The notes beneath the pieces were generated by a model. It worked only from the letters and a program-made list of their open reading frames with translations, searched no databases and was not told the origin of the DNA. A program made the translations under genes and the position numbers. From Octopus bimaculoides (taxonomy: Eukaryota), in contig NC_068990.1 of assembly GCF_001194135.2 (NCBI RefSeq), forward strand, positions 14,826,644 through 14,889,137: a stretch of 62,494 bases of DNA. The letters are read 5' to 3'. This document shows, piece after piece, positions 5,247 through 51,751 of the stretch (the stretch's first letter is position 1; every line of letters begins with the position of its first letter).

Positions 5247-5316
5247 ATGAATAGCAAGATGTCACCAGTCTTACTCTTCCTCTTCTTCAGTTTATCCATT
5301 AATTTCACGAATGGAG
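5247..5316 (+). CDS. Chitinase coding exon 1 (signal peptide MNSKMSPVLLFLFFSLSINFTNG)
   Basis: A pyrimidine tract and acceptor (tttctttacag, ending 5241) precede the ATG at 5247. The peptide is hydrophobic and signal-like. Donor G|gtaaga is phase 1, matching exon 2. Confidence 0.85.
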
Positions 5317-7866: not shown

Positions 7867-7905
<39 letters not shown>

Positions 7906-10900
7906 TCATCATCATCATCATTTAACGTCTGCCTTCCATGCTGGCATGGGTGGGATGCACACGTATGCACATGCTCTTCCTTCCATATATTCACAATACA
8001 ATAATGAGGAACAGCTAATCATTAAAATTCTTTGTGAAATTCCCCTGTAATTATGACAACATATTTACTGTAATCCCTAACAAAAAAAGGGTATATTTTA
8101 GTGTATTTATAAACATAAATATATAGCTAAACACATTTGTGTGACACATATAGATTACTTACAGCTGTCTCCCAACTAATTGCTTTGAGGTTCGTATTCA
8201 TTCACCAGCACTAACACCAGTTGTAAATAAGTACAATGGGGTACTTATTTCACTAAATAGCTCAGTTTAAAATGACTAATAACATTGTATAATTTAATGC
8301 CGTATTTTCCAACATACAAGCTGACCTGATATAAAGCGTGAACATACAGTGTTAAGTCGTAGAGTAAACATTCCAGCATCATTACTATCTATCTAAATAG
8401 TGTTGCATTTCAGGTGAAATTTTCAGTCTTGCAATGCTGTCATGATGTATAAATTGACCTACTTTTCTTGAATATGTGTTTTGGTCTAAAGAATTTTACC
8501 TGCTAGAAATATCAACCAAATTCCTTCAAATCACATTTTTTTTTTTTTTTTTTAAGCCATAATCATTGCTCACAGGCTATTGTAACCTAGTAACATGAAT
8601 CATGCTTTTGCTGATTGTTTGGTGTCTTTGAAGTAATGTGTGGGTAGACGTCCTTGTAGCTTTTCATCTTTGATCCAGTGGAACATTGTGGATATGACTA
8701 CGAGGGTGAGAAAGAGAGGAGAGGGGGAGGGGGGTGAGAGGGAAGGAGAGGGTGAGAGGGAGGGAGAGCAAGAGGAGAGGGAGAGATGGAGAGATAGGTA
8801 GAACAAGAGAGAGAGGGAGAGCAACATATGTACACTTTCTCTGTAGCTTCTCATTCTGTTTTCCAGGAAAATCAAAATACATAAGTGCATGCTACTATAC
8901 CAATTGGTCTCCAGTGAAGCAGGAAGCAAAAGCTCGCTTATTTCCTGAGAATTTGCCTGGCAACTTGTGTACGCATCTTATGTATGCGTTTGTCAAAATC
9001 AAAGATGATTTATCCATATATACATCAGAAGAAAAAGATCTTACCGGTAATTATGAGAAGTTTAATGCACTTAAGAAAAAGTACAACACCATTACATTAC
9101 TTTCAGTCGGTGGAGAGGCTGCTGAAAACAGACACTTTGAAATGGTATCAGCAACAGCGGAAAACCGAACAAAATTTGCTGATAATATTATTAATTATGT
9201 ACGGAAGTACAATTTTGATGGAATTGATATTGATTGGGAATATCCAAATTCTGTTACAAAACATAACTTCACTTTGCTTCTAAAGGTAAGGAGTCTTTCT
9301 CATTTCTTTTATTTTAACTGCTTCATAGTTACTTATTCTATTGGTCTCTTTTGATGAACCACTAAGTTATGACAGTGTAAACAAACCAGCTCTAGTTGTA
9401 AAGTAGTGGTAGAGTGAACTGGTACTTCTTAGGTCAGGATGAAGTGAGAGTACCAGGATCTGGTCAACAGAACAGACTGCTCATGAAAATTAATGTGGAA
9501 GTGGCTGAACACTCCACGGACACATGCATCCTCTAGATGTAACCATAGAATATTGACTCAAGAAACCCATGCCAATGTGAAAAAAGCTGACATTAAAGTA
9601 AATCAAGCTTTTTTTTCCCCCCATCAGTAAGTAAATGGAAATTTACTATGTGGTGAGTGGATTGCAAGAGAAATCTTGAGAAGAACTCTTGTCAAGCAAG
9701 CATTTCAGCTTTTAGTAGCAGAGGCTCTAAAGGAGCCAGGCCCACTTGGGTCATGACTCCTAAATGTTGTCTTGTTGTTTATGAAATACTGCCTTTAGTG
9801 GGACTTGAACATGGATCCTTTGGCTGATCTTATTTCCATGAACTGTGGTGCATATTGCTCAGCCACATAGACCGCCGCAAGAACTTGCAATGTGGATCTG
9901 TTTCTAACTGGGTTTCCTTCCAACTATGTTTACTAGTTTACAGTCTTTCTTTTCAGCTTCAGCAAACATCTCTCTTTGCCTGTATCCACATTGAGCTTTT
10001 TTTCTCAGCTGATTCTAACAGGCATTTCATTGTCACTGTTCTTTTGCTTCAGACAGTAATATAAGTTATGAATGAGCAACATTGACTTTGGTGTATGGCT
10101 GTGTCTGCACCAATAAATTTAGTTATAGATACAACAACCCTTAGTGTCTGTGTAGCTGTTCATAAGACCTGGTCAATATCTGTATGGACATCTACACTGG
10201 ACTGTGTGAGCATATCCATATGCATGTATGACAGTTACTTTAGAATATGTCTGTATGTGTTTGTAGGTAGATGAAGGGTACCATTGTTCTCTCCAAATTT
10301 TGTGCACTACATGTACACATGTTTTGTTGTCAGTACATAAGAAATTAAAATGTGCATGAAAGGTAAGCTACTTAAAGTAACAAAGCAATTAATAATTATA
10401 CTTATCATACACTGATCATGCACATACTTTTGTCCCCCATTGTACCCCATAAGATTCCAGTACATGCTGACAACTACAAATTAACACCAGTTCTGTCAAG
10501 TGTCATTAATCTTAGGTTCTGTGATTTTGAAATAAATGCTTGTTTTAGTTGCTTGCAAGAAAAAAATATTTTTAAATATGTTTTATTCTAATTTCTTAAG
10601 ACATTAAGAGATTCTATTGAGAAAGAAGTAAAAATATCAAAGAGAAACAAGTTGGTATTATCAGCTGCAGTTGGCGTTGGTAAACAACGTATAACAAATG
10701 GTTATGAAGTGGATAAAGTCTCTGAGTAAGTTTTTATCATTGCCTTTATATTTTAATTAAACATGTCACTAGTCTTTTTCTTTTTTTCTTTTTAAGTTAG
10801 TCAAAGAAAGTGTCAGTCACATTTGCCTCCTCCTCTCCAAGACTTATGAGATTAATGTGATTGATGTTTGCAGTTTAGTTGTGAAAATAAAACAACAAAA

Positions 10901-13900
10901 AAATAAACATGATGAAATTCTAGAGTATGGCAGTTTTGGAAAGGAAAGTTTGAGTTAATGTTTAGTTCATAAGTAGGGATAATGAGAAGAGAAGAGACAG
11001 ATTTTAAATGGGAATGGCTTGAGAGGATATGCATTTAGCTAGGTCAGAGGAACTGAAACCATTTTTGTGATAAAAGAAGCAATGGCTTGTATGTGAGCAA
11101 ATGATGGTGTTATCTTACAGCATGAGCATACTGAACAATTGCTTGGGGCCTCATAGATCTAGGGCCCCAATTCTAATCTATGTATACTATGGTTTGCTAT
11201 CACTAAATAAATACTATAGGCTCAGTAATTTGATTTCCTTGGGGACCTAGAATGCTTCTAAGATGGCCCTAGCTAGTGACTGAAGTATTTTTTTGAAATT
11301 TTTTTATGCGCCCTTTTAAAGCCTAGCCAGGCTCATGGGCCCGGTTTCCCGGTTTCTATGGCGTATGTGTTCCCCACCCCAGCTGGACGGGACGCCAGTC
11401 CATCGCAGTGTTACTCAAAAAATAGGAAGAAAGAGCAAGAGAAAGTTGGGACGAAAGAGTACAACAGGGGTTGCCACCACCCTCTGCTGGAGCCTTGTGG
11501 AGCTTAGGTGTTTTCACTCAATGAACACACACAACACCCAGTCTGAGAATCAAAACCGCGATCCTCCAACCGCGAGTCTGCTGCCCTAACCACTGGGCCA
11601 TTGTGCTTCCACTGAAGTATTTTGGTAAATCTGTAATTATCGATGTGAGATGGAGTAAGCAGTGTTGTCTTCTTTCTATATATTGCAACCGTGTGTACAT
11701 GATGGTAAAACTTAGCTTGTAGAGAAAGATTTTTTTGAATTTGGAGGACTTTTGGAAGTAAGGCGACTGCAGATGTAGATTTTAATTTCACCAGAAATGC
11801 TACTAATAGAGATATCTAGATTAGGAAGTAGTGAATTGAAAGGAATCGGGAGAGTTTGTAGAAAATCTCTTGGCAAGGAAGCAGAAAACTCTGCTATAAT
11901 TTCACATGCGGAAGAGCTTGCAGGCTGTGTTTTACATGAAGCTAACCTGTATTTCTCTGATAGTAGTCTTGCACATATAGAAAGAATCAATAGAAGTCAC
12001 TCAATTGTTGGTGGTGGGTAACTTTCTCTATGTTAAGGATGTTTTACCTCTACTTCTATAAGTTTGGGGAGTTGAGGATTTGAAATTTAAAGATATGGTC
12101 ATGTGAGAGATATGAAATGAGATGCCTAGGTGAACATGTTTGGTCACCTACTAAGTTATGTCAGATGGGTCAGGCTGTTAAATAATTACTACCAAGGGTA
12201 GCTGATATAAAACTGGCAACGCTGAAATCAAACCTGAAGTACTAGAAGCTTTAGGTGGAGAGGGTTTTGCAATATAACAAAAGGTATTTTAAGCAAGGAT
12301 CAAGAAATCTAATTAATGCAAGGTCAGCAGTGATTACTGCATAAAGACTAAGTTGAGTGATGGGAAAGGGGTCAATTATTTGTAGTTATTAACTGATACA
12401 AACAGTTCAGAATTGCAAACAATTCAGCTTCTGCACCAACAGAATTTATATTAGAGGAACAGCAGAGCCAAGAAGAGCTGTGCAATGAAGTCATTGGAGG
12501 TGATGATATGAGATAGAGAGGTGAGGTGAAATTGAAGTCTCTAATGCACGAAATGAGATTACATTGACTCCAGTGCTTGACTGGAACTTATTTTATCAAC
12601 TCAACTCCACCCCCCAAAAAATGGAGGGCAAAGTCAACTTTAGCAGAATTATAACTCAAAAACATAAAGCTGGAACAAATGCCTCAGAGCATTTTGTCTG
12701 GCAATGATTCTAGCTTGCTGCTATTACCATCATTAAAATGGTTTTAAATGTTTTAGTTCCATCAGGTCACTACTTTTACTAACCTCTCCCACCAGAGTTC
12801 AGGCCTTGTGCCTATAGTAGTGTGAATTATTATTACTGTTATTTTTGTTGTTGTTGTTGCCTTGTTTTACATGAGTTATTCCAAGTTTCAGCAAGAGACC
12901 TCAGTAACAGCAAGTTACTTAATTCAGGAGCCTGAAATAAGTACAAGAATTGCAGGGAGCTGGTAGAAATGTTAGCATGCCGGGCAAAATGCTTATTGGT
13001 ATTTCATCTGTCTTTATGTTCTAAGTTCAAATTCTGCTGAAATTGACTTTGCCTTTCATCCTTTCGGGGGTCGATAAATTAAGTACCAGTTGCGTACTGG
13101 GGTCGATCTAATCGACTGGCCCCTCCCCCAAAATTTTGGGCCTTGTGCCTAGAGTGGGAAAAAAAAAAAAAGAATTGAAGGAGCTGGTGCCGTAATGTAC
13201 CAGCTTCTGCATTCAGTCATCAGTAGAAGGGAAGTAAGTGCAAAAGCCAAATTTGCTGTCTTCAGTTCAGTGTCCATGCCTATCCTTTCTTATGATCAAG
13301 CGTTTTGGGTAATGTCTAAAAGAATATATCACGAATACAGGCAGCCAAAATGGGGTTCCTTCAAAAGGTCTTTCGTTGCTTAATAAAGTGTGAAACTTAA
13401 GATCAGAAAGGCACTGCAGGTATAGCCACAAGTTCTCCAGATTGAGAGATCACAGCTCCAGTATTATGGACATGTGGTAAGAATGTTCCAGGAAAGAATT
13501 GCTAAATGAGTTTTATGAACAAAACCAACTGGCAGGAGACCAAGGCTTGACTACTAGTAAGATAGTTAGATAATGTCCATAAGCTCAGTTGGTGATCCAT
13601 CTAGATGAATAGGAGATGGTTGCTTCTGACAGGACCTGATGGAAGGTGTGTTTGAGGACTCTGCCCCCATGATCCTTCTTGGAATAAGTGGGTGAAAACG
13701 AGATGAAATGAGATTCCTCATATGTATGTGACAAACTGAATTTTTTTTTTTTCACATTTTAGATATGTAGACTTTCTGAATGTGATGGCTTATGATTTTC
13801 ATGGCAGTTGGAACAGAATAACAGGATTTAAAAGTCCTCTCTATGCTCGAAAAAACGATTTAAGATATGAAAAGGAACTCAGTCAGGTTGGTATTTTATC

Positions 13901-14709
13901 GAATTTAATCTGAATCATTTCTTTTTCTTTCATCTATGATTTTCTGTATCATGTGGAAGCTCGCATGGTGCCATGTAAAAGCATCGATCTTGAAATTACT
14001 TAAAGCAAAGCATACTTCTTAATCACTTGGTCATGCCAGTACATTTGTCTTTAACTTGTTTCAGTCTTTGGATTGTGGGGCACCATGTTGGGGCACCATC
14101 AAACAAACTGACCCCAATTGCTTATTTTTTTCAAGTCTGGCACTTATTCTATTGGTCTTTTATTGCTGAACCATTAAGTTATGGGAGACATAAACAAACC
14201 AACACAGTTTGTCAGACAGTGGTGGGACAGACAGACACCACCCCCTCACACACACGATGGGCTTCCTTCACTTTCTGTCTACCACATCCACTCACAAATC
14301 TTTGGTTTTCCTGTATCTGTAGTAGAAGACACTTGCCCAGGGTTCCACACAGTGGGACTGAACCTGGAATCATATGCACCTATTTATATATATATTTTAA
14401 AATTTAATTTCAATAAAGAATATAATAAAGTTTAAAAAATCTCACAAAGTTTCACCATCAAGTGTTTACCTTTATTGATTCTTCTTCTTTCTTTTACTTG
14501 TTTCAGTCAGTTGGCTGTGGCCATGCTGGAGCACTGCATTGAAAAATTTTTTTTAATCAAACAAATTAACTTCAGGACTTATTGTTTAAGCCTAGTACTT
14601 ATTCTAGTGTTCTCTTTTACTGAACTACTAAGTTACGGGGATGTAAATGCACCAACACTGGTTGTCAAATAGTGATGGCGGAGGTGGAGACACAAAGACA
14701 CACAATACA

Positions 14710-14758
<49 letters not shown>

Positions 14759-17461
14759 AAAATTTAGAAAATGGAGATGTGGCATTAATATAATTTATCA
14801 TATGCAAAAATACAACATATTCTCTTACAGCTGTTTCAGTTTAGTCTAAAAGATTAAGACCCACAAAGACCATAAGCATTTAAAACATTTTGGTGTCCCA
14901 ATTTTTATGTAATTCAAAATATAAACAATAATAAACTGTAAGATAAATTTTTATTTTTCAATATGAAAGAAAACTAACTGTAAGATAGAAAATAATATTT
15001 TTTTTTGTATACTTCCACTTTATTTATATTTGAAAAGTCTTTGATTAGATCCTCACTATGACAATATAAACACTTTGAAATTATATTTCCAATCATATAA
15101 AACACTTCGAATATTATTTTAGCAAGTTTAAAGTAATTTCTTTTGTGCTGTAAATCATTTACCATTTCTGTGGTACTCTGCTTCCTGCGATGTTCTAAAC
15201 TTATTTTGCTTAATGGTTAATCCAGTGCTGCTGTTAGGGATTTCTCTGATTTATTTATATTTTTTCTTTCAAGACCAGCCAGTATATTAAAAATATATTG
15301 CCAAAAATGCATTGCTTTTACTACAGGTACCCAAAGACTTTATTAGAGAATTTCATTTTTTATTTATTTGGCAGGAATGGTCGATAGAGTATTGGTTAAA
15401 ACTGGGAGCCCCCAAAAATAAGCTCGTTTTGGGAATGACAGCAGCTGGTAATACGTATACCTTAAAGAATGCAAGTCAGCACGGTTTAGGAGCACCAGTG
15501 GAGAAAGCAGGAAATAAAGGACCATATACAAAAGAAGAGGGATTTCTGTCTTATTATGAGGTGACAAGTAGTTTATACTTATATCTGTTTCATTATAAAG
15601 TACCATTAAACCAGATTTAATTGATTATGTTTTTTTATTTTGTTTTTTTTTAATCAAAATCAGAACTTTTTGATTCTATTCTCCCTTTGAACTGAAGATG
15701 TTAGACTCTCTCCTAGATCTGTTACACTTTGTCCTAACTCTGGCCTGAAATTGTTAGTCTTTGTCTACCTTGAGACTAAATGAGGTATCCATCTTTGTTC
15801 TATATATGCACCAGAGACTCTACATTTGAACTGGTGCTGTGAGATTCTGCTCAGCATCTGGAACAGAGCTGTTGGGCTCTGCTCTATACCTAGACCAGAG
15901 CTGTTGGGCTTTGCTCTGCATTCGGAGCATAGTTTTTAGACCCTGATCTGCATCAAGACAAGAGCTGTTAGATTCTACTCTGCATTTAGTGTATAGCAGT
16001 TTCAGACCCTGATCAGCATTTGGATCAGAGCAGTTAAACTCTTGTCTATATCTAGAGCAGAGCTTTAAAAGTCAACTCAGCATCAAAACTAGAGCTTTTA
16101 GACTTTGCTTTAAATCTGGAATAGAACTTTTAAACTCTGCTCCGCATTTGAGACAGGAGCTGTTTAACTCTGTTTTATGGATTGGAGATGCTATAACCTT
16201 TTCTGCATCTGTACTAGAATTGTTAGACCATCTCTGAATCTGAACCAGAATTGTTAGAACCTTTTCTACTTCTCAAACAGAGGAGATGTTAAATTCTGCT
16301 ATATATCTAGTTTGGACATTTTAGAGTCCGCTCTATGTCTGAACTCAAGGAATTGTAAGATAACAATTTGTTCTTTATTTACCCAGTTTAAATTACTCAG
16401 TCAGTTGCATTTGTTTGACATTCAATTATAACTTCACCATGTATTTTTCATGTGTTTTCAGACATTGAAACAAAACTCATGATAAACATAAATCTCTGAT
16501 TAAGCTGACTGTTTATATTAACACTCATACTTTAATGCTCTTTACTCTGTAAAGATTTGGAAGATTAGCTCTCAGAATATGTCTTCCACCACAGTCAGTC
16601 TTAATAACACCAACATATTGATCATCATCATCATCATCATCGTTTAACGTCCGCTTTCCATGCTAGCATGGGTTGGACGACTTGACTAAGGACTGGTGAA
16701 ACCGGATGGCAACACCAGGCTCCAATCTAAATTTGGCAGAGTTTCTACAGCTGGATGCCCTTCCTAACGCCAACCTTTATATAAATAATTTACGGTTAAC
16801 TATGATTTTAATACACTATTTATTGACTTTATTCACCAATTCTATTCTCTTTATAATATCATGTGCTGACAAAAATGCTTCAATTTTAAAAGATGCTGCT
16901 TCATACACTAATTAATGCTATCGTTTTTTTAGCTATGTTTTGACACTAAAGCTTCTTCAGACATACCAATATTCTTGTATACTGTTTTGACATATTGTCA
17001 CCATACATTATACAGTGAATGAATGTATCTATAAATGTATTTATGTAAGTACATATGTATATATGTATATGTATATATGTATATGTATATATGCATGCAT
17101 GTATGTATGTATGTATGCATTTATGTATGCATGTATGAATGCATGTATGTATATATGCACGTATGCATGAATGTATGTATGCATATATATATATTATATA
17201 TATATATATATACATAAATAGTTATCGCCAAGCTAACATGGCAGTCCAGAAAAATAGGATGAATGCTACTGTTGATTAGTTCCAAGAGGCCATCGCCTCT
17301 AGCTAGCTGTGTCACACCTGAACCTGTGTCCATTATAGCCTTCGAAGGTTATAATGGACACAGGTTCGTGTGTGACATAGCTAGCTAGAGGCGATGGCTT
17401 CTTGGAGTTAATCAACAACAGCATTCATCCTATTTTGGGGATTGCCATGTTAGCTTGGCGA

Positions 17462-17551
<90 letters not shown>

Positions 17552-20500
17552 ACATATGTTTACATGTATGTATACATATATATATTATATGTTGTTGCAT
17601 TACATTGGCTCATTAACCCTACTTTTAAACTTGTTCTTCCACAGATATGTAATAAACTAAACAAAGATAATTACACTTATGAATGGGATGATATCCAAAC
17701 AGTACCATTTGCTTACAAAGGAGATCAGTGGATTGGCTTTGATGATTACAAGAGCATACAACTGAAGGTAAAACAACTACAGTAGTCAATTTCTATAGTA
17801 ACCTAATTTTTCTCTAATTAATTAATCTTTATCACAGGCCTTTGATGTAAGACTCTATATGGTTACTGAATAACATATCTTTTATTGTTTGCGTGTTTCA
17901 GTCAAAAATGAAAATAACACTGACATCTCATTCTAACAGATATATTTACCAAAATTACATAAAGATATCTTGAAATACTAAAGGGTAAATTTATTCAATA
18001 AAATCGCCATTGTCTTTAACCATGGCCTCCAGACAACTTTGGAATCTCCTGCAGCTCTTCTGGATGGTCTCCTTGTTTAAGTTAGTGAATACTGCCATAA
18101 TCCTTGCCTTCGGTTCATCTTTGGTGTTTTAAGGAATTTTGTTGCTCTTTCGCTTAACTGTGCCACACACATAATGATCAAGAGGGTTGCAGTCTGAGGA
18201 GTTAGGGGCCAGATGTTAGGGGTGATGTGGTCACAGAAATTGTCTGACAGTCATGACTGGGTTCTCCTGCTTGTGTGGCATGGTGCAGAGTCCTGTTGCC
18301 AGACATAGGGTCTTCCAGCAGCCACCTTCTTGACCCAGGGCAGCACTACCTCCTTCAGGCACTTGATGTAGGCCTCTGTGTTGAGTCTGAGGGCATGCTG
18401 GAAGATGAAAAGAGGCATAACATCAACATCACTAGTGATCACTCAAAACAAGATGATGTTGACTGGATGTTTGATTTTTATCACTCTCAGTACATGTCCT
18501 CAGGTTGCACTGTCCTCAGATTGACACCCAAAGACTCTGAAATGTTTGTACTGGAGCTTCTGGTGTGAATGCCAAACAGTACAGCATCTCGTTTTCGAAT
18601 TTCTGGCAGAGTGAATTGCGTCATGGTGCTGTTTTTCTCACAGATGGTGCCCAACGGACCCTACTATACTGTGTAGTCAACAAATTCAAAAACAAACAAT
18701 GCACATGTGCGAAATTAAAAATATAAAATGGCAACAACTTCTCCATTGCACCCTGTATATATNNNNNNNNNNNNNNNNNNNNNNNNNNNNNNNNNNNNNN
18801 NNNNNNNNNNNNNNNNNNNNNNNNNNNNNNNNNNNNNNNNNNNNNNNNNNNNNNNNNNNNNNNNNNNNNNNNNNNNNNNNNNNNNNNNNNNNNNNNNNNN
18901 NNNNNNNNNNNNNNNNNNNNNNNNNNNNNNNNNNNNNNNNNNNNNNNNNNNNNNNNNNNNNNNNNNNNNNNNNNNNNNNNNNNNNNNNNNNNNNNNNNNN
19001 NNNNNNNNNNNNNNNNNNNNNNNNNNNNNNNNNNNNNNNNNNNNNNNNNNNNNNNNNNNNNNNNNNNNNNNNNNNNNNNNNNNNNNNNNNNNNNNNNNNN
19101 NNNNNNNNNNNNNNNNNNNNNNNNNNNNNNNNNNNNNNNNNNNNNNNNNNNNNNNNNNNNNNNNNNNNNNNNNNNNNNNNNNNNNNNNNNNNNNNNNNNN
19201 NNNNNNNNNNNNNNNNNNNNNNNNNNNNNNNNNNNNNNNNNNNNNNNNNNNNNNNNNNNNNNNNNNNNNNNNNNNNNNNNNNNNNNNNNNNNNNNNNNNN
19301 NNNNNNNNNNNNNNNNNNNNNNNNNNNNNNNNNNNNNNNNNNNNNNNNNNNNNNNNNNNNNNNNNNNNNNNNNNNNNNNNNNNNNNNNNNNNNNNNNNNN
19401 NNNNNNNNNNNNNNNNNNNNNNNNNNNNNNNNNNNNNNNNNNNNNNNNNNNNNNNNNNNNNNNNNNNNNNNNNNNNNNNNNNNNNNNNNNNNNNNNNNNN
19501 NNNNNNNNNNNNNNNNNNNNNNNNNNNNNNNNNNNNNNNNNNNNNNNNNNNNNNNNNNNNNNNNNNNNNNNNNNNNNNNNNNNNNNNNNNNNNNNNNNNN
19601 NNNNNNNNNNNNNNNNNNNNNNNNNNNNNNNNNNNNNNNNNNNNNNNNNNNNNNNNNNNNNNNNNNNNNNNNNNNNNNNNNNNNNNNNNNNNNNNNNNNN
19701 NNNNNNNNNNNNNNNNNNNNNNNNNNNNNNNNNNNNNNNNNNNNNNNNNNNNNNNNNNCTCAAGAGTGGGCAGCAACAAAAAACCTATTTGTATATGCTC
19801 CACAAGGGAAAACAAGGAACATAGTTTACAATGAGGTGTTATAATCACAACAGCAAGAAAGTATGTACATGATCACCTTCTTTTACGAAACTTCATTGAC
19901 TTTCATATATTTATATTGATATACATATATATACGTGTGTTTGGGTGCGTGTGTGTATATACATCTCTATATATAAAGACGATGCGTAGTCTCGACAGCG
20001 TTTTTAGATTTCATTATTCTCTTTAACCCGGTCAACGCCGGGTATTTCTGCTAGTATATATATATATATAAAGAATCCATTGAATTAGGTACTTAAATTG
20101 AGACACCTTGCTAAGTCAGTATAATCCACACACCCAAACAATATTAATTGATTGTTGAATAACAAGACTCCATGCAGGGGCGTTTGTACCTGATTTCCTT
20201 GTGTGTACAGACAATGTAACCCAACAAAGTGAAGATATCTGCTCTTGGTAATTCAGACATGTACTTTCTATAGTATTTCCAAAGTGCTGGTTTCAAATTA
20301 GGTGAATAATATATAAATGAGTAACAAAGATGTACAGGTATCAATTCATTACAGCCATTTCAAGTATCTCCTTTAATTGATTAATGAAAACATTTAATCA
20401 TTTGAAAGAAACTGTTCTTGGCAGATGACTGCATAGACTTCAAACAAAATGGATACCACCATTTTCTCAACATATTCCCATCAATAATGGAACTCAAAAT

Positions 20501-21565
20501 ATTTACATTGTTCCTTTTGAGTTCCATTATTGATGGGAATATATTTGAAATTTATGCGATCATCTGACGAGAACAGTTTCTTTCAAATGATGTAGTTGCA
20601 TTAATCAATTAAAGGAGTCTCTTGAAATGGCCGTAATGATTTGACACCTGTACAGCTTTGTTACTCATTTATATTACAAGGGCTGTTACTATAAGTAAAG
20701 CCGCACGCTGGAAAGGGACGCTGAAGTCAAACTACTTTATCAAAAATATACACACTTATACACACAATGTATTTCTAAAAATTATATACTGAGTATTAAT
20801 CTTTTACCTTAATTGGTTTTACATGCTGGCTACTTGATAAAATCAAGTATAGATTTTCTCCTTATATTTAATTGATATATATTTTATATCATCATCATCA
20901 TCATCATCATTTAACGTTTGCTTTCCATGCTAGCATGGGTTGGGCGATTTAACTGGGCACTGGCGAACCAGATAGCTACACCAGATTCCAATCTGATCTG
21001 GTATAGTTTCTACAGCTGGATGCCCTTCCTAATGCCAACCACTCTGAGAGTGTAGTGGGTGCTTTTTACATGCCACTGGCACGAGGGCCAGTCTGGCGGT
21101 ACAGGCAACGGCCACGCTCAAATGGTGTTTTTTACGTGCCACCTGCACAGGAGTCAGTCCATGTTTTGTTCACATGCCACCAGCACAAGTGCCAGTAAGG
21201 CAAAGCTGGAAACAATCGCGCTTAAATGGTGCTTTTTATGTGTCACTGGCATGGGAGTGAGACGGCTACTCTGGCAGTGATCCCGCTTGGATGGTGCTGT
21301 TAGCGCTCCACTGGCACGGGTGCCAGTCATCAAATTTGGTTCAGTTTCAATCTCACTTGCCGCAACAGNNNNNNNNNNNNNNNNNNNNNNNNNNNNNNNN
21401 NNNNNNNNNNNNNNNNNNGTGTCCAATGAAGGAAGGTTGGCATGGGTGCCAGTCATCGAATATGGTTCAATTTCAATTTCGATTTCACTTCCCACAACAG
21501 GCTTTCGCAAGCAGGGTTTTGTGTCCATATAGAAAGTTACATACATATGCATGTGTGTGTGTATA

Positions 21566-21608
<43 letters not shown>

Positions 21609-21955
21609 GTGCATGTGTGTTTGGGCACTCCCATAAGAATTCTGTAAATTATATTGTAATACTTTTGTTTTTCCTTTTGCAGACCAAATGGCTAATTTCT
21701 CAACAGTTAGCAGGAGCAATGTTGTGGTCACTGGACTTAGACGATTTTAGCAACATGTGCGGGAAAGAAGCCTTTCCACTAACCAAAGCTATCCGTTATA
21801 CTCTTGATCGCGATGTAGGACTTGTTACTACCACAGAATCTCCTGCAACAAAAAGACCAAAACTTACAACTACTGCAGGTGCCACTTATGTTCACATGTC
21901 ATACTACTTAGCAGCATATATTCTTACAGCTTATATCTTCTATTATAATATGTGA
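5247..21955 (+). CDS. GH18 chitinase (CHIA/chitotriosidase-like), 7 coding exons, 439 aa (gene span)
   Basis: Exons 5247-5316, 8867-9285, 10601-10725, 13763-13886, 15375-15560, 17645-17767 and 21683-21955 all have AG/GT boundaries and compatible phases (1,0,2,0,0,0), totalling 1320 nt. Family motifs CYYTNW, CTHLMYAF, FDGIDIDWEYP, MAYDFHGSW, QWIGFDD and WSLDLDDF occur in order. Confidence 0.95.
5911..6646. mobile_element. Mariner-derived non-autonomous element with a nested RTE 3' fragment
   Basis: Imperfect TIRs tacatgggagtgcttaaaagttcctggtt (5911-5939) and aaccaggaactttttcagcaccctctcatata (6615-6646). A mariner C-terminus-like segment lies near 6010-6055. An RTE tail is inserted from about 6058. 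Confidence 0.6.
6058..6540 (-). mobile_element. RTE LINE 3' fragment (diverged)
   Basis: Begins with the (CAT)n tail and tttaatgtcc...ccatgctggcatggg head shared with many copies. It ends in a decayed GRPRKxW-type RT C-terminus at about 6380-6490. Confidence 0.65.
7280..7441 (+). repeat. (ACC)-rich microsatellite running into a gap
   Basis: Imperfect CAC/ACC trinucleotide repeats. It is intronic and lacks a plausible exon context. Confidence 0.85.
8867..9285 (+). CDS. Chitinase exon 2 (contains catalytic DxxDxDxE)
   Basis: Acceptor ttttccag. Encodes KSKYISACYYTNW...NFDGIDIDWEYP...LLLK. Donor AAG|gtaagg. Confidence 0.97.
10601..10725 (+). CDS. Chitinase exon 3
   Basis: Acceptor tttcttaag. 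Encodes TLRDSIEKE...KLVLSAAVGVGKQRITNGYEVDKVS, matching GH18 LLLSAAV...GYEV. Donor GA|gtaagt. Confidence 0.93.
11307..11612 (-). mobile_element. SINE sharing the family D 3' tail but with a different body
   Basis: 11307-11410 is the reverse complement of the 35170-35270 tail. The tRNA-like head tggcccagtggttaggg...gttttgattc lies at about 11545-11605. Confidence 0.75.
13155..13700 (+). mobile_element. RTE/Rex3 (Expander)-like LINE 3' remnant
   Basis: Decayed translation AGAVMYQLLHSVISRREVSAKAKFAVF...QAAKMGF...IERSQLQYYGHVVRM...PTGRRPR, typical of the RTE RT C-terminus. Confidence 0.8.
13763..13886 (+). CDS. Chitinase exon 4
   Basis: Acceptor cacattttag. Encodes YVDFLNVMAYDFHGSWNRITGFKSPLY...ELSQ. 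Donor CAG|gttggt. Confidence 0.96.
15375..15560 (+). CDS. Chitinase exon 5
   Basis: Acceptor ttggcag. Encodes EWSIEYWLKLGAPKNKLVLGM...GPYTKEEGFLSYYE. Donor GAG|gtgaca. Confidence 0.95.
15690..16345 (+). repeat. Degenerate 32-bp minisatellite (about 20 units)
   Basis: Recurrent unit approximately AGAGCTGTTAGACTCTGCTCTGCATCTGGAAC; a 32-nt period was counted in adjacent units. Confidence 0.8.
16990..17550. repeat. (ATGT)n and (TA)n microsatellite cluster around the palindrome
   Basis: Seen directly. Similar TA/CA/CAT/AAT arrays occur throughout the window, e.g. 1-100, 2548-2632, 4250-4400, 33200-33620, 44880-45060 and 51948-52010. Confidence 0.95.
17218..17468. repeat. 251-bp near-perfect palindrome (MITE-like) between (TA)n tracts
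   Basis: Arms 17218-17343 and 17344-17468, centre ccttc|gaagg, no spacer, about 12 mismatches and one indel. Confidence 0.95.
17645..17767 (+). CDS. Chitinase exon 6
   Basis: Acceptor cttccacag. Encodes ICNKL...VPFAYKGDQWIGFDDYKSIQLK. Donor AAG|gtaaaa. Confidence 0.96.
17991..18760 (-). mobile_element. DD37D (maT-type) Tc1/mariner transposon relic
   Basis: Translation ...YVWQQDSAPCHTSRRTQS...PNSSDCNPLDHYV...NGDFIE*, with 37 residues between the 2nd and 3rd Asp after correcting a frameshift. A terminal ...ttgcaccctgta (TACAGGGTG-type end) lies at about 18735-18758. The other TIR is not seen. Confidence 0.85.
19964..20054 (+). mobile_element. 91-bp non-autonomous Helitron-like element
   Basis: 5' end A|TCTCTATATATAAA. 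3' hairpin acccgg-tcaacg-ccgggt (20026-20043) followed by CTAG|T at 20051-20055. Confidence 0.7.
20311..20674. repeat. About 365-bp imperfect foldback (MITE-like)
   Basis: atataaatgagtaacaaag.tgtacagg...catttgaaagaaactgttct...catattcccatcaataatggaactcaaaa is mirrored by reverse-complement segments up to 20674. Confidence 0.9.
20888..21500 (-). mobile_element. RTE LINE 3' UTR copy (spans a 50-bp gap)
   Basis: Same 3' UTR as 36592-36975. Further copies at about 7902-7960, 16617-16775, 22955-23170, 27846-27962, 28800-28890, 39270-39620, 43935-44190, 52290-52460, 54745-54870 and 61005-61330 (minus), and 38050-38355, 40445-40735 and 55760-56050 (plus). Confidence 0.8.
21683..21955 (+). CDS. Chitinase exon 7 (end of the barrel, Thr-rich stalk, hydrophobic C-terminus)
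   Basis: Acceptor ccttttgcag. Encodes TKWLISQQLAGAMLWSLDLDDFSNMCG...TTTESPATKRPKLTTTAGATYVHMSYYLAAYILTAYIFYYNM*. The 3' end is less certain because a weak donor AG|gtgcca exists at 21879. Confidence 0.85.
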   Translation, partial: TKWLISQQLAGAMLWSLDLDDFSNMCGKEAFPLTKAIRYTLDRDVGLVTTTESPATKRPKLTTTAGATYVHMSYYLAAYILTAYIFYYNM

Positions 21956-22093: not shown

Positions 22094-22099
22094 AATAAA
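22094..22099 (+). terminator. Candidate poly(A) signal of the chitinase
   Basis: AATAAA about 140 nt after the stop at 21955, followed by a T/GT-rich tract. The hexamer is common in AT-rich DNA. Confidence 0.35.
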
Positions 22100-23239
22100 T
22101 ATATAAACAAAAAGAATCTTGTTTGACATTTTCTTTTCATCATCATCATCATCATCACCATGACCACGACCACGACCACCAGAATTTGAACTCAGAATGT
22201 AAGGACAGAAGAAATGCTGCAAAGCATTTTGTCTGACGTGCTAACGATTCAACCAGCTCATTACCTTTATAATAATAATAATAATAATAACAACAGCAAT
22301 AATAGTAATAATAATAATAATAATAATAAAGAAGTGAAATAGAACCTGTGTGTGTGTTTATTATTGGCATAATGACCCTCCTGTGTTACAACAAAATCTG
22401 TTTCTACTCATGGGTTCACATCAAATATCTTACAAACCAAATACAAAAACAAAACATTTGTATTTATCCAGATATGATTGCTATTTAATTAATCTCATTC
22501 TGTTGTTTATTTAGTTCTTGTGATTCAATCAACACTTAGCTGGGTCAGCACAGATTTAAGGTCATTATAAACAGAGTGTAAAAGAATTTGAAGTTGTGCA
22601 GGAATCTGTTGATTGAATATGAAATTACCCAAATATTTCACCACAGATCTTTTTTCTTTGTTGTCTGTTACACACACATGATATGTTGGAGACATTTTTT
22701 TAAAAAGCTATGTGTGTGTGTGTGTGTGTGTCATTGTGTTTGTGTATGCCCCAGTGACTGACAGAATAAACATCAGGCATTAAAATCAAAAAATGTACTG
22801 GGGTCACTTCATTCGACTGATATCCCCTTAACATGGTGCCCCAGCATGGCCTCAGTCTAATAATTGAAACAAGTAAAAGAATAAAAGAATATATAAAACA
22901 ACACAGCACACATGACTTTTGGAAACAATTTTTTCACACTCAGAATTATCGAAGCATCATCCTCATTTAATGTCCATTGTCCATGCTGGCATGGGTTGTA
23001 TGATTTGACCAGGGCTGGTAAGCTGAGGGGCTTGCATCAGACTCCATTCTCATTTGGCATGGTTTCTACAGTTGGATGCCCTTCCTAATGCTCCCCCAGT
23101 TTACCAATTTTCAGTCAAACCGTCCAGTCCATGCCAGCACGGAAAGTGGGTGTTAAATGATGACGATGGTGGTGGCAGCGGCAGCGATGAGGACACACAA
23201 CAGATTAGACAGTCAGAAAAAAAATTCCTAACATTGGGC

Positions 23240-24155: not shown

Positions 24156-27100
24156 CGTAGTGAAGATCGCGCGGGTATTACGGAAAAGCCGATCTTTGGT
24201 AAAGATCGCTGAAGACACTTTTTACGGAAAAGGCCGATATTTAGGATTCGTACCGAAAGATCGCCTACGTCTGTCCTTTCGGAGTTGATAAAATAATGCC
24301 ATCCATATAATCGCCTAGCTCCTTACTCCATCCAATTTCAGGTTTTCTGTCTGTTACAAGAAGAATTAAGAGCTTTGGATTATCTCCCCTGTTGGGAAAC
24401 CACATTACAGTGTTATTTACAGCACCTGTCATTTGTTTACATGAATGTCAGTTTCTGATCAACACAAACATGATTTTGTAATTAATGTTCTATTTACTTA
24501 AATATCTATTTAAATTTTTTAAATTGAATCTCAAATCTCAGAATGTGTAAAGGTAAGAGACGTGTGTTATATTTATATATCAACTATATCTTTTCAAATG
24601 TTTCGCACACGACACTTGAACGATAAAGAGAGATAAAGCATGCTTCTTCAAAGATTAGTTTGAATTTAATCAGTCGAGTATTTATATCTACAAACATTAT
24701 CAATGCAATTAACTTACACTTCAATCCAAAAGTTTAAGCGTTTACTTAGTTATTGGTTCCAGAAGAAATAATGTGATCAGTACACAAAATATAGGGTAGA
24801 AACACCTGCAAAAAACTTATTTCCTCCCTCCAAAAACGTATCAATTTTCTTTACCTCTGTGGAGTGTATGTTTAAACATATTTATAAATTTGTGCTCGAG
24901 ATATCCAGTATTTTCAGAAGATTTCAATATTAGTATTTTTTTCCCCGCAGCATTTTGTAATTTCGTGTCCTATTCCTTCCTTCTGCGGTAATGATAGCTG
25001 TTCCCAAACCCTGCCTATATCTTAGTTTCCAGTATACATTAAAGATCAATAAACTAATTTTTTAAACTTGGCCTTTTAAAATTAAACAATCAAACTGCAT
25101 TTCTGTTCATGCTTAACATAATTTGTCTTTAATACAGAAATCTTTAAAAGAAGAACTTATAAGTCGGAGGACCTTATCAATAATCTGTTTCGGATAATCA
25201 TTACAGTAGCTAAAATATATCCGATCAATTTGGATCCCCTATTTTATTACATAATAATTTTCTGTAACCCATTTCAAAAGTGAAAGCTAACGTCAATTTT
25301 TTACCCCTCTGGTACCAATAGAAACTATCCCATATATATACACTTATTTATGCAAAAACCCACGTGGAAGCCTCTAAATGGTCGCTCTAGCTGAAGAAAA
25401 CAGCAGCTAAATATTCATTAAATAAGACCCTACTCTCTTAAAAACTGAAGGACACCATGCGTGATGTATTTCGAATAAAAATGGAATAAATTGGAACACC
25501 TTTGGTCAGCTCTGTCCGGGTTGATCTCGTCAATAGTAACTGATGGAAACGTCTTCCTCTGCTTTGCAGCCATGTAGTCTTGGATTCAGTCCCATTTCGC
25601 GGCATCTTGGGCAAGTGTCGTCTACTATAACCCTGGGCCGCCCTATGCCTTGTGAGTTAATTTCGTTGACGGAAACTGTGCGGAAGCTTGTCATATATAT
25701 ATATGTAATTGTATGTATTATGTATGTACACATTTGAGTTTGTCTTCCACTACTTGACAACAGGTGCTGGCTTGTTTACGGACCCGTTTCTTAGCTGTTT
25801 GGCAAAACAGTTCTACAGAATAAGTACCAGACAGCATGGCCAGAGTCCAATGACTGAAACAAATAAAAGATAGGAATTATTGATAAGGAAAGACGGACCG
25901 ATTTCAGCTCTAATATCATTTCTACCAGTCAGTGTTGACTCTGGATGTAATTGTTATTATTGCTGTTGTTTACCCTAGAGGTGTTTCAGGCCTGACCATT
26001 TCTCTTAACCAATGCATCCTTTCCCTTTTTAAGACAGTTGTGTGTAAAGGAAGAGTGGTTTGGTCGTTATTTTTAGTAGGGTGCACTGCTTAGGTCTATC
26101 AAATTTACTCAAAAGTCATTAGTTGACCTAGGGCTACAGTAGAAGACACTTGCCCTAGGCAGTATGCAGTGGGTCCGAACCTGAAACCATGTGATTTCTA
26201 TATGAATCTTAGTTTAAGTTGTAAGCCTCCGATGTGTATCAATGTTAGCACACAACATGCCACCTCAGCTAAATATAGAGTGTACATGCCTGTCTACTTC
26301 TGATGGTAACTCTATACCCCCAAGGTGTCAGTCACGCTGGCCAAAGTGCACCCACAAACTTTCTAAAGATTCTAGTTTTGCTTATGCAAGTTAAACTTCT
26401 TTGTGACGTGATTTAATTTAGAAAGACGTAAAAGACAAAACAGTTCTACATATGTTGAGTGTAAATATGTAAAAGTTAATCACATCCGGGATGCATATGA
26501 TCCCATCTCATTTATATGTAATTAGGCACAGGCATAGCTGTGTGATTAAAAAGTCTGTTTCTGAACTAGTTTACAATCCCACAACTTAGTTTGACACAAA
26601 GGGACCGATAGAATAAGCGGCAGGCTTTTTAAAAAAATTGTAACCTAAAAATTAACGACATTTGAAGTACATACCCACCTCATATGTCTCTTTCTCTCTC
26701 TCTGTCTCTCTCTGTGTCTGTCTGTCTCTCTCTGTCTCTCTCTCTATATATATGTTATTAGCTAAGCTAAGATACCAAATGCATTACTCAGGGTGTAATT
26801 ATCTTTGCTTCAGTGACTGTATTCACGAGTGTATATAAAGTGGATACGCTGGGCAGATACATTTTGAGATTGTGTTTTATATTGACTACACTGCTTGACT
26901 GCTACTTATTTCATCAAACCCAAAACAACAAAAAGAATAGAATCCAATGCGTTTGATCTCAAAATGTAAAGTCATGTAACCCGATATAGTAATGCATTGG
27001 TTATGCTCTATTGATTTTTTTCAGTTCACCATCTTTTAAAATATATCTTGTATCTCTTACCTTTTACTTGTTTCTGTCATTGGCCTGTTGCCATTCTGGA

Positions 27101-33768: not shown

Positions 33769-51751
<17,983 letters not shown>

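What the first reader, a model, noticed from the sequence alone, without database searches (positions are those of the whole stretch)
21820..21955. Chitinase ends in a GPI-anchor-like signal instead of a chitin-binding domain
Seen: after the barrel comes a Thr/Pro stalk (TTTESPATKRPKLTTT), small residues A-G-A 26-24 aa from the end, a short spacer, then a hydrophobic, charge-free tail (YYLAAYILTAYIFYYNM*). An AATAAA follows at 22094, and no CBM14-like exon was recognised before the next gene. Established: signal peptide, small omega/omega+2 residues and a hydrophobic C-terminus define GPI addition; GPI-anchored chitinases are known in fungi, while typical animal GH18 chitinases are secreted, often with CBM14. 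Inference: a cell-surface-tethered chitinase, perhaps remodelling chitin at the epithelium of beak, radula, sucker or gut lining. A weak phase-1 donor (AG|gtgcca, 21879) sits exactly at the stalk end, so secreted and anchored isoforms are possible. This is the most promising lead in the window.
Basis: partly seen in the sequence, partly recalled or inferred. Interest (0 to 1): 0.75.

Follow-up and report, generated by a model that had tools for sequence, protein, structure and literature searches.

The report
Octopus chitinase with membrane-anchor tail
An Octopus bimaculoides chitin-degrading enzyme ends in a flexible stalk and a short greasy tail that looks like a lipid (GPI) anchor signal. 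The same layout is inherited across molluscs, an annelid and a rotifer, so it is a real but not unique feature that probably holds the enzyme on the cell surface.

Summary
The window holds a complete 7-exon GH18 gene (5247-21955, + strand, 439 aa). It is identical to RefSeq XP_014778450/XP_052827003 of Octopus bimaculoides, named 'chitinase-3-like protein 1'. The protein has a signal peptide, a barrel with an intact DGIDIDWE catalytic motif, and a Thr/Pro stalk. It ends in A-G-A, a 6-residue spacer and a 17-residue charge-free, Tyr-rich tail.

The tail is not an artefact:
- Three Octopus species, Argonauta and cuttlefish mRNAs all end the same way.
- On a tree built from the barrel alone, the gene sits in a spiralian clade where 26 of 30 members carry such a tail. 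The clade includes chiton, gastropods, bivalves and an annelid.
- All members checked keep the catalytic motif.

No CBM14 exon exists anywhere in the window. The 'donor' at 21879 is an ordinary chance GT, and no isoform uses it.

A rule set built from the published five-region GPI definition is met. The octopod tail is too weakly hydrophobic to be a convincing transmembrane helix. No dedicated GPI predictor or experiment was available, so GPI versus transmembrane anchoring remains an inference.

Oyster GH18 chitinases with a Thr-rich linker and a C-terminal membrane anchor have been described since 2007, and GPI-anchored GH18s are known in fungi. This is a new member of a known kind, of modest interest.

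The parts
5247..5316 (+). Exon 1: start codon and signal peptide (MNSKMSPVLLFLFFSLSINFTNG, residues 1-23)
   Evidence: tblastn of the O. sinensis orthologue and the GT-AG model. Second-longest charge-free run in the protein. AF2 helix 7-21. The cleavage site was judged by eye only.
8867..9285 (+). Exon 2: N-terminal part of the GH18 barrel, including the catalytic motif
   Evidence: Pfam PF00704 covers residues 31-369, E 1.3e-92.
9217..9240 (+). Catalytic motif DGIDIDWE (D141-E148), the DxxDxDxE motif with its Glu intact
   Evidence: Translation. Aligned against CHI3L1 DGLDLAWL. The motif is kept in all tail-bearing relatives checked.
10601..10725 (+). Exon 3
13763..13886 (+). Exon 4
15375..15560 (+). 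Exon 5
17645..17767 (+). Exon 6
21683..21826 (+). Exon 7, first part: last strand and helices of the barrel (residues 350-397)
   Evidence: The AF2 barrel is confident up to about residue 393.
21827..21874 (+). Thr/Pro-rich stalk TTTESPATKRPKLTTT (residues 398-413). It is a flexible linker and probably O-glycosylated (inference).
   Evidence: Translation. AF2 pLDDT is below 50 for residues 395-423. Thr-rich linkers sit at the same place in relatives.
21875..21883 (+). Candidate GPI attachment triplet A414-G415-A416 (omega, omega+1, omega+2)
   Evidence: Rule-based scan. AGA is conserved in Octopus species and Argonauta. The accepted residues for these positions are given in bioRxiv 10.1101/838680.
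21884..21901 (+). Spacer TYVHMS (omega+3 to omega+8)
21902..21952 (+). Charge-free, Tyr-rich hydrophobic tail YYLAAYILTAYIFYYNM (residues 423-439)
   Evidence: AF2 helix 421-438. The omega-to-tail stretch (21874-21952) is 78 of 79 nt identical to O. sinensis, and the one change is synonymous.
21953..21955 (+). Stop codon TGA. O. sinensis has TAA at the same codon.
22094..22099 (+). AATAAA poly(A) signal, 139 nt after the stop
   Evidence: The 3' UTR is 95.5% identical to O. sinensis.

Best explanation
The gene encodes a catalytically competent GH18 chitinase. Its RefSeq name, 'chitinase-3-like protein 1', is misleading.

Proposed route, step by step:
1. The N-terminal signal peptide takes the protein into the secretory pathway.
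2. In the ER, GPI transamidase cleaves at or next to A414 and replaces the last roughly 25 residues with a GPI lipid.
3. [quoted passage not shown]
4. There it can cut or remodel chitin close to the cell that makes or meets it.

**Shown:** the gene model, the intact catalytic motif, the anatomy of the C-terminus, its conservation, and the absence of a CBM14 exon.

**Inferred:** that the tail is used as a GPI signal rather than a transmembrane helix, that the protein sits at the cell surface, and what its biological substrate is.

The architecture was inherited from an early spiralian ancestor. It is not an octopus invention.
For: **1. The anatomy fits the published five-region GPI signal** (10.1101/838680).
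- A polar flexible linker precedes the site.
- Omega is Ala, one of the six residues seen at experimentally verified sites.
- Omega+2 is Ala.
- A 6-residue spacer follows.
- A hydrophobic stretch starts at omega+9 to omega+11 and runs to the C-terminus.
- My rule set built on that definition passes the window protein and all cephalopod orthologues. It passes 36 of 282 unique GH18 relatives, all of them tail-bearers. No vertebrate or CBM14-bearing control passes.

**2. There is a hydrophobic segment at each end and none inside.** This is the principle used by FT-GPI (PMC9876418). The two longest charge-free runs are residues 410-439 and 5-24. AF2 gives helices 7-21 and 421-438 around a confident barrel and a disordered stalk.

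**3. The tail is a poor transmembrane candidate.**
- The best 19-residue window sums to about +4.6 kcal/mol on the Hessa scale. Argonauta gives +5.0.
- No basic residue follows the tail.
- Only 2 residues follow the hydrophobic stretch.

**4. The physico-chemistry is conserved while the sequence diverges.**
- O. sinensis and O. vulgaris have an identical tail.
- Argonauta has AGAAFVHMHSSYLAAAIVTAYIVYQNL.
- The Sepia esculenta transcript ends SSASNLLIATMTEILLLFASFILVMQYLSNVS. It was found as an uninterrupted ORF in 67 RNA-seq assemblies.
- The stop position is conserved even though the stop codon differs, TGA versus TAA.

**5. The tail looks ancestral.**
- In an NJ tree built from the barrel only, Octopus, Argonauta, Sepia, a chiton and the annelid Owenia group together. 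They nest in a 30-tip clade with 26 tail-bearers.
- Named members come from Pinctada, Tegillarca, Ostrea, Saccostrea, Sinanodonta, Haliotis, Lottia, Babylonia and Liolophura.

**6. The enzyme looks active.** DxxDxDxE is intact in all 23 tail-bearers checked.

**7. There is no alternative 3' end.** No CBM14 exon was found in the window, and no other isoform is annotated.
Against: - No dedicated predictor (NetGPI, PredGPI, big-PI) and no experiment was available. My rule set is home-made. It was not benchmarked on proven GPI proteins.
- The octopod tail is unusual. Six of 17 residues are Tyr, and its Kyte-Doolittle hydropathy (1.33-1.45) is the lowest among tail-bearers and only just above the control maximum of 1.23-1.24. 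A predictor that counts Tyr as polar might reject it.
- Ala is the rarest of the accepted omega residues.
- Authors of the oyster relatives interpreted the equivalent segment as a 23-residue transmembrane domain (PMC4457423).
- Small residues are common in any Ser/Thr/Ala-rich linker, so the omega motif alone is weak evidence.
- No open paper found here describes a GPI-anchored animal chitinase. No octopus transcript was seen directly.
Confidence: 0.6

Rival explanations
1. The tail is a C-terminal single-pass transmembrane anchor (type I, almost no cytoplasmic tail) that is not cleaved. This is how the oyster chitinases Cg-Chit and Ca-Chit were interpreted. The enzyme would still sit on the cell surface, held by a helix instead of a lipid.
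For: - Ca-Chit and Cg-Chit are described as GH18 plus a Thr-rich region plus a C-terminal transmembrane/membrane-anchor domain (PMC4457423).
- AF2 models residues 421-438 as a helix.
- Several relatives have much more hydrophobic tails. Hessa 19-residue sums run from -3.2 to about 0 in Babylonia, Sepia and Sinanodonta.
- A second tail-bearing clade has a conserved Lys 3-4 residues from the end.
Against: - In Octopus and Argonauta the best 19-residue window sums to +4.6 and +5.0 kcal/mol, which is unfavourable for membrane insertion.
- The hydrophobic stretch is about 15-17 residues long and ends 2 residues from the C-terminus, with no basic residue after it.
- A small-residue triplet sits at the expected distance upstream in every cephalopod orthologue.
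Confidence: 0.17
2. The protein is simply secreted. The C-terminal extension would be a sorting or retention peptide, a cleaved propeptide, or a self-association segment, and not a membrane anchor.
For: - The octopod tail is only marginally hydrophobic and rich in Tyr.
- Half of the tails in this clade share an Asn 2-3 residues from the end. That is more sequence conservation than a disposable hydrophobic peptide would seem to need.
- From general knowledge: some plant chitinases carry short C-terminal sorting propeptides.
Against: - What is conserved across phyla is hydrophobicity and the absence of charge at the very C-terminus after a signal peptide. That is the signature of anchoring signals.
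- No such sorting peptide is known for animal GH18s. This rests on my knowledge and was not tested.
Confidence: 0.15
3. Alternative splicing at the GT at 21879 joins the stalk to a downstream exon, such as CBM14, to give a secreted isoform alongside the anchored one.
For: CAG|GTGCCA matches 6 of 9 donor consensus positions. That equals the two weakest real donors of this gene.
Against: - Sites this good occur 9.1 times per kb in the window and 7 times inside this gene's exons.
- No CBM14-like fragment was found in any frame of the window. The best E-value was 0.024, in intron 3, while held-out CBM14 controls scored 2e-24 to 2e-4.
- The next annotated coding exon, 2.6 kb downstream, belongs to ferroportin.
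- All annotated isoforms in O. bimaculoides, O. sinensis and O. vulgaris end in the tail.
- The Sepia mRNA has no GT at the equivalent place and reads through.
Confidence: 0.04
4. The tail is a gene-model or assembly artefact: read-through into intron or UTR sequence caused by a missed splice site or an assembly gap.
For: The window has N-gaps in intron 6 (18763-19758 and 21369-21418), close to exon 7.
Against: - The tail lies in the same exon as conserved barrel residues, with no gap in between.
- An independent O. sinensis assembly gives the same ORF and the same stop position.
- Spliced cuttlefish cDNAs encode the same architecture.
- Proteins from many mollusc genomes do too.
Confidence: 0.02

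Closest known systems
Oyster 'atypical' GH18 chitinases Cg-Chit (Crassostrea gigas, Badariotti et al. 2007) and Ca-Chit (C. angulata, PMC4457423)
   Same: Molluscan GH18 with active-site motif(s), a Thr-rich region after the catalytic part, and a hydrophobic C-terminal segment described as a membrane anchor.
   Different: Ca-Chit is about 1,095 aa with two active sites. Its anchor was called a 23-residue transmembrane domain by TMHMM, and GPI was not considered. The octopus protein is a single-domain 439-aa enzyme with a shorter, weaker, Tyr-rich tail. I did not have the oyster sequences, so orthology was not tested.
Fungal GPI-anchored GH18 chitinases (Aspergillus nidulans ChiA and its A. fumigatus orthologue; yeast Cts1p and Candida CHT2/CHT3 are related enzymes)
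   Same: Signal peptide, GH18 barrel, Ser/Thr-rich linker and a GPI signal. The enzyme is held at the surface where chitin is laid down or reshaped (PMC3257436).
   Different: A distant GH18 subgroup (fungal subgroup B) in another kingdom. GPI anchoring of ChiA has been shown by experiment, whereas here it is only inferred. The resemblance is in how it would work, not in common descent of the anchor.
Vertebrate chitotriosidase (CHIT1) and acidic mammalian chitinase, and insect group II chitinases
   Same: They are the closest solved structures (5wup, 5hbf, 1waw, 3fxy; E 1e-92 to 1e-102) and share the DxxDxDxE motif.
   Different: Those enzymes are secreted, and full-length forms end in a CBM14 chitin-binding domain. 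The octopus gene has none and ends in a stalk plus hydrophobic tail.
Chitinase-3-like protein 1 (CHI3L1/YKL-40), the name the gene carries in RefSeq
   Same: GH18 fold, about 38% identity, and no CBM14.
   Different: CHI3L1 has lost the catalytic Asp and Glu (DGLDLAWL) and is a secreted lectin. The octopus protein keeps DGIDIDWE and has the extra stalk and tail. The name is a best-hit label, not a description.
Insect chitinases with a transmembrane segment
   Same: GH18 enzymes tethered to a membrane while acting on apical chitin matrix. Protein-specific transmembrane domains are noted in PMC4738247.
   Different: From my own knowledge, the insect anchor is an N-terminal transmembrane segment. 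The means of tethering and the lineage differ. Not tested here.

Membership tests
Glycoside hydrolase family 18 (active chitinase type) | GH18 (beta/alpha)8 barrel domain | tested here: met
   Pfam PF00704, E 1.3e-92, residues 31-369 covering profile positions 3-317 of 317. The AF2 barrel is confident (mean pLDDT 82). PDB relatives score E about 1e-100.
Glycoside hydrolase family 18 (active chitinase type) | Catalytic DxxDxDxE motif with the proton-donor Glu | tested here: met
   DGIDIDWE at residues 141-148, window 9217-9240.
Glycoside hydrolase family 18 (active chitinase type) | Measured chitinolytic activity | not testable with these tools
   Needs recombinant enzyme and a 4-MU-chitooligosaccharide or colloidal chitin assay.
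Chi-lectins (CHI3L1-type chitinase-like proteins) | Loss of the catalytic Glu or Asp in the DxxDxDxE motif | tested here: not met
   The motif is intact here. The CHI3L1 row in alignment A1 has DGLDLAWL.
CBM14-bearing animal chitinases (CHIT1/AMCase type) | C-terminal six-Cys chitin-binding domain (PF01607) | tested here: not met
   Pfam finds only GH18 in the protein. An HMM built from 18 CBM14 domains finds nothing in any frame of the window (best E 0.024). Three held-out CBM14 proteins score 2e-24 to 2e-4.
GPI-anchored proteins | N-terminal ER signal peptide | tested here: inconclusive
   A typical n/h/c layout is visible (MNSK / MSPVLLFLFFSLSI / NFTNG) with a charge-free run at 5-24 and a helix at 7-21. 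No SignalP-type predictor was run.
GPI-anchored proteins | Small omega residue (S, N, G, D, C or A) with G, A or S at omega+2, after a polar flexible linker | tested here: met
   A414-G415-A416 follows TTTESPATKRPKLTTT. The criteria come from 10.1101/838680. The motif has low specificity in Ser/Thr/Ala-rich linkers.
GPI-anchored proteins | Spacer followed by a hydrophobic tail that starts near omega+10 and runs to the C-terminus with no charged residues | tested here: met
   Spacer TYVHMS; a 10-residue window with KD 1.87 starts at omega+11; the last 30 residues are charge-free. Hydrophobicity is marginal because of 6 Tyr.
GPI-anchored proteins | Positive call by a trained predictor (NetGPI, PredGPI, big-PI) | not testable with these tools
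   None is installed and there is no network access. Only a home-made rule set was applied.
GPI-anchored proteins | Experimental proof: PI-PLC release, Triton X-114 partition, or a C-terminal peptide carrying ethanolamine phosphate | not testable with these tools
   Bench experiment.
Molluscan membrane-anchored GH18 chitinases (Cg-Chit/Ca-Chit type) | GH18 domain(s), then a Thr-rich region, then a C-terminal hydrophobic anchor segment | tested here: met
   The architecture matches the description in PMC4457423. Tail-bearing relatives from Ostrea and Saccostrea fall in the same barrel-based clade.
Molluscan membrane-anchored GH18 chitinases (Cg-Chit/Ca-Chit type) | Orthology with Cg-Chit or Ca-Chit themselves | not tested
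Ca-Chit is a two-site protein of about 1,095 aa, so it is at best a paralogue.

The most novel reading that the evidence does not exclude
An old, spiralian-wide clade of catalytically intact GH18 chitinases is GPI-anchored. The clade spans cephalopods, gastropods, bivalves, chitons, an annelid and possibly rotifers. These would be the first GPI-anchored chitinases recognised in animals, convergent with the fungal ones. They would work at the apical membrane next to the membrane-bound chitin synthase, trimming or remodelling nascent chitin in radula, beak, shell matrix, chaetae or cuticular linings. The earlier 'transmembrane domain' reading of the oyster enzymes would then need revising.
Probability: 0.45. 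Interest if true: 0.5.

Novelty: new member of a known kind. Interest (0 to 1): 0.3.

Why it matters
**If the anchor is real.** Octopus and many other spiralians would keep an active chitinase fixed on the cell surface rather than releasing it. That would point to local, cell-controlled chitin remodelling in structures such as beak, radula, stylets, sucker and gut cuticle, or shell matrix. It would not point to digestion or humoral defence. It would also be an animal counterpart of the fungal GPI-anchored wall chitinases.

**For annotation.**
- 'Chitinase-3-like protein 1' is a misleading name for an enzyme with an intact active site.
- Domain-based annotation (Pfam) does not register this recurring C-terminal signal.

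**Limits.** The feature is conserved and predicted only. A very similar architecture has been published for oysters, so the gain is incremental.

Tried and rejected
- **Pfam scan of raw frame translations downstream of the gene.** I replaced it with my own CBM14 HMM run against all 2,611 open fragments of the window, with held-out controls.
- **Second word-index homology search with the C-terminal 131 aa,** meant to catch partial octopus transcripts. It returned 4 candidates and nothing useful.
- **Direct octopus transcript evidence.** Exact-protein look-ups for O. sinensis and O. bimaculoides returned only genome records.
- **Literature searches.**
  - 'GPI-anchored chitinase' occurs only in fungal papers.
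  - Accession numbers of the octopus proteins occur in no paper held.
  - A broad 'membrane-bound chitinase / glycosylphosphatidylinositol' search was uninformative.
  - The Rhodnius and tick papers looked for GPI signals in chitinases or other candidates and reported none.
  - A molluscan GH-family survey does not discuss anchors.
- **O. bimaculoides versus O. sinensis DNA comparison.** The stretch from the omega triplet to the end of the tail (21874-21952) is 98.7% identical and the 3' UTR 95.5%. The species are too close for this to prove selection on the tail.
- **FT-GPI.** I read the method to see whether its published rules could be implemented. It depends on TMPred matrices that were not available, so only its principle was used.
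- **Gene-model artefact and the 21879 splice isoform.** Both were considered and rejected; see the rival explanations.
Full report
**What is in the window.**
- The window is Octopus bimaculoides DNA. It is 100% identical and colinear with chromosome record CM046610.1 of assembly GCA_001194135.2.
- Mapping the O. sinensis orthologue with tblastn and reading the junctions gives a complete gene on the + strand.
- The gene has seven exons, all with GT-AG introns: 5247-5316, 8867-9285, 10601-10725, 13763-13886, 15375-15560, 17645-17767 and 21683-21955.
- Its 439-aa product is letter for letter the public protein XP_014778450.1 / XP_052827003.1 / UniRef A0A0L8GSN7, named 'chitinase-3-like protein 1'.
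- No exon is lost in the assembly gaps, which all lie in introns.

**Checking the observation.**
- Exon 7 reads ...LDRDVGLV-TTTESPATKRPKLTTT-AGA-TYVHMS-YYLAAYILTAYIFYYNM-stop.
- The feature is not a chance property of the sequence. The last 30 residues are the longest run without D, E, K or R in the protein. The second longest is the signal peptide.
- Shuffling the protein gave a charge-free last 28 residues at frequency 0.00055.
- On Kyte-Doolittle, Hessa and both Wimley-White scales, the tail falls outside the range of 107 GH18 relatives that lack a tail.
- One qualification: six of the 17 tail residues are Tyr, so on Kyte-Doolittle it is the weakest of all tail-bearing relatives.

**The protein.**
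- Pfam finds one GH18 domain, residues 31-369, E 1.3e-92, and nothing else of note.
- The catalytic motif DGIDIDWE is intact (window 9217-9240). Real CHI3L1 has DGLDLAWL. The RefSeq name is therefore a best-hit label, and the protein should be regarded as a probable active chitinase.
- The closest solved structures are an insect chitinase (5wup), human chitotriosidase and acidic mammalian chitinase.
- An AlphaFold2 model from a 20-sequence alignment has mean pLDDT 82. It shows a confident barrel (29-393), a disordered stretch (395-423, pLDDT below 50) and a terminal helix (421-438, pLDDT 61-70).

**Is the tail real mRNA, and is there another 3' end?**
- All annotated products in O. bimaculoides, O. 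sinensis and O. vulgaris end in the identical tail, including a 446-aa alternative N-terminus.
- Between O. bimaculoides and O. sinensis, the stretch from the omega triplet to the end of the tail (21874-21952) differs by one synonymous base in 79. The stop falls at the same codon although the stop codon itself differs, TGA versus TAA.
- The nearest decapodiform relative, P0003, occurs as an uninterrupted 1,353-nt ORF on 2.4-2.6 kb contigs from 67 RNA-seq assemblies.
- One of those runs is named in two papers as Sepia esculenta larval RNA-seq. That mRNA reads through stalk and tail into about 690 nt of 3' UTR.
- I built a CBM14 HMM from 18 chitinase C-termini. It detected three held-out CBM14 proteins (E 2e-24 to 2e-4) but nothing in 2,611 open fragments from all six frames of the window. 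The best fragment scored E 0.024 and lies in intron 3.
- The next annotated coding exon starts at 24543, only 2.6 kb after the stop, and belongs to ferroportin.
- The GT at 21879 matches 6 of 9 donor consensus positions. Such sites occur 9.1 times per kb in the window and seven times inside this gene's exons.
- I found no support for a second, secreted isoform.

**Conservation.**
- Argonauta hians ends ...TTTHAGAAFVHMHSSYLAAAIVTAYIVYQNL.
- The two decapodiform transcripts end ...SSASNLLIATMTEILLLFASFILVMQYLSNVS and ...SAASHLVAITMVQMVSTFIVLTFITQYLSNIF.
- Beyond cephalopods, the same layout of Thr-rich linker, small residues, spacer and charge-free hydrophobic end appears widely. Named examples are Ostrea, Saccostrea, Pinctada, Tegillarca, Sinanodonta, Haliotis, Lottia, Babylonia, the chiton Liolophura, the annelid Owenia and the rotifer Seison.
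- I built a neighbour-joining tree from barrel columns only, so that the tail could not influence it. It groups Octopus, Argonauta, the decapodiforms, the chiton and Owenia together, inside a 30-tip clade of which 26 carry the tail. A second small clade, which includes Seison, is all tail-bearing.
- All 23 tail-bearers checked keep DxxDxDxE.
- The simplest reading is that the tail was present in an early spiralian GH18 and has been kept by selection for its physical properties. Inside octopods it is also kept partly in sequence: 11 of 17 tail residues are shared by Octopus and Argonauta, by inspection.
- The tree is distance-based and has no support values, so 'ancestral' is a reasonable inference, not a demonstration.

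**What the tail does.**
- The published description of GPI signals lists five regions (bioRxiv 10.1101/838680):
  1. a polar flexible linker;
  2. the omega residue;
  3. a restrictive omega+2, mostly G, A or S;
  4. a spacer;
  5. a hydrophobic stretch from about omega+10.
- The verified omega residues are S, N, G, D, C and A.
- I turned that description into an explicit rule set. The window protein passes with omega = A414, as do all cephalopod orthologues. In all, 36 of 282 unique relatives pass. All are tail-bearers, and none is a vertebrate or CBM14 protein.
- The layout of 'one hydrophobic helix at each end, none inside' is also the principle of the FT-GPI predictor (PMC9876418).
- Three things argue against a true transmembrane helix in octopods. 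The best 19-residue window is about +4.6 kcal/mol on the Hessa scale. The hydrophobic stretch is only 15-17 residues. No basic residue follows it.
- In some relatives (Babylonia, Sepia, Sinanodonta) the tail is hydrophobic enough for either reading.
- I therefore put about 0.6 on GPI anchoring, 0.17 on an uncleaved transmembrane anchor, and 0.15 on a non-anchoring role.
- None of this could be checked with a trained predictor or at the bench.

**Comparison with what is known.**
- Functionally, the closest analogues are the fungal GPI-anchored GH18 chitinases, such as Aspergillus nidulans ChiA. ChiA sits at sites of polarised wall growth (PMC3257436).
- By lineage and architecture, the closest described proteins are the oyster 'atypical' chitinases Cg-Chit (2007) and Ca-Chit (2015). 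They are reported as GH18 plus a Thr-rich region plus a C-terminal membrane anchor read as a 23-residue transmembrane domain (PMC4457423).
- In the library searched, the phrase 'GPI-anchored chitinase' occurs only in fungal papers. No paper mentions the octopus accessions.
- So the octopus gene is a new, single-domain member of a known kind, the membrane-anchored molluscan GH18. Two modest additions come out of this work: the anchor looks more like a GPI signal than a transmembrane helix, and the architecture defines a conserved spiralian clade.

**Verdict.**
The anchor-like signal and the absence of CBM14 hold up. The two-isoform idea does not. The anchor chemistry and the tissue of action remain open.
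- Interest is modest (0.3).

Noticed in passing
window 9217-9240 (and the whole gene 5247-21955): The public name 'chitinase-3-like protein 1' suggests an inactive lectin, but the catalytic DGIDIDWE motif is intact. The same naming problem affects tail-bearing relatives in Haliotis, Babylonia, Ostrea and Saccostrea.
   Followed up: yes
window 21941-21952 (…YYNM); relatives P0002, P0003, P0004, P0012, P0104, P0196, P0206, P0289: Ten of 20 tail-bearing members of the Octopus clade have an Asn within the last 6 residues, usually 2-3 from the end (YYNM, YQNL, LSNVS, LSNIF, IANLV, FTNLM, FMNM, IFNMI). None of 13 tail-bearers outside the clade does. The Haliotis tail GAGATTLY...FMNM resembles Octopus TAGATYVH...YYNM. 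Such sequence conservation is unexplained for a peptide that is supposed to be cut off and discarded.
   Followed up: partly
relatives P0005, P0006, P0011, P0199 (Seison nebaliae): A second, separate clade of tail-bearing GH18s has a conserved Lys 3-4 residues from the C-terminus (ITKYL, LAKFFY, LIKIF, IIKFY). These tails might work differently, for example as a transmembrane helix with a minimal cytoplasmic stub.
   Followed up: no
relatives P0008 and P0057 (Montipora capricornis): These GH18s end in a different Cys-rich module after a Pro/Thr/Ser linker (P0008: CQAIGAWQGNANMDQWCKDNCAAGNCPANMCVCT). It aligns outside the CBM14 domains, and Pfam lists no PF01607 for either protein. Its identity was not pursued.
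   Followed up: no
window 24543-24552, 40961-41146, 50290-50745 (+ strand): The next gene is ferroportin (Pfam FPN1, E 1.8e-14 and 2.3e-21). The public model starts with a 10-nt coding exon ATGTGTAAAG|gtaaga only 2.6 kb after the chitinase stop. That start looks like a weak automatic prediction.
   Followed up: partly
window 16622-16775, 36592-36787, 39268-39412, 43938-44190, 61003-61147, 40498-40740 (-); also 2331-2566, 42531-42757, 57159-57367, 49972-50143 (-): Two families of short interspersed repeats, 87-97% identical between copies, are scattered through the introns and intergenic DNA. Their open frames (e.g. [37 protein letters not shown]...) recur in the ORF list and are not genes.
   Followed up: partly
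window 18080-18442 (- strand, intron 6): Two adjacent open frames (…VVLPWVKKVAAGRPYVWQQDSAPCHTSRRTQS…) look like a decayed transposase remnant, but the fragment tested had no Pfam hit.
   Followed up: partly
window 21540-21625, 22130-22185, 22270-22330: Microsatellites flank exon 7: (TG)n just upstream of the acceptor, and a (CAT/CAC)n run and an (AAT)n run just after the poly(A) signal. N-gaps at 18763-19758 and 21369-21418 lie in intron 6.
   Followed up: no
locus L002 and protein P0007 (Sepia esculenta RNA-seq): A 200-aa variant of the cuttlefish orthologue diverges right after ...FTLLLK, the position of the exon 2/3 boundary in Octopus. It continues into unrelated sequence, which looks like an intron-retaining transcript.
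   Followed up: no
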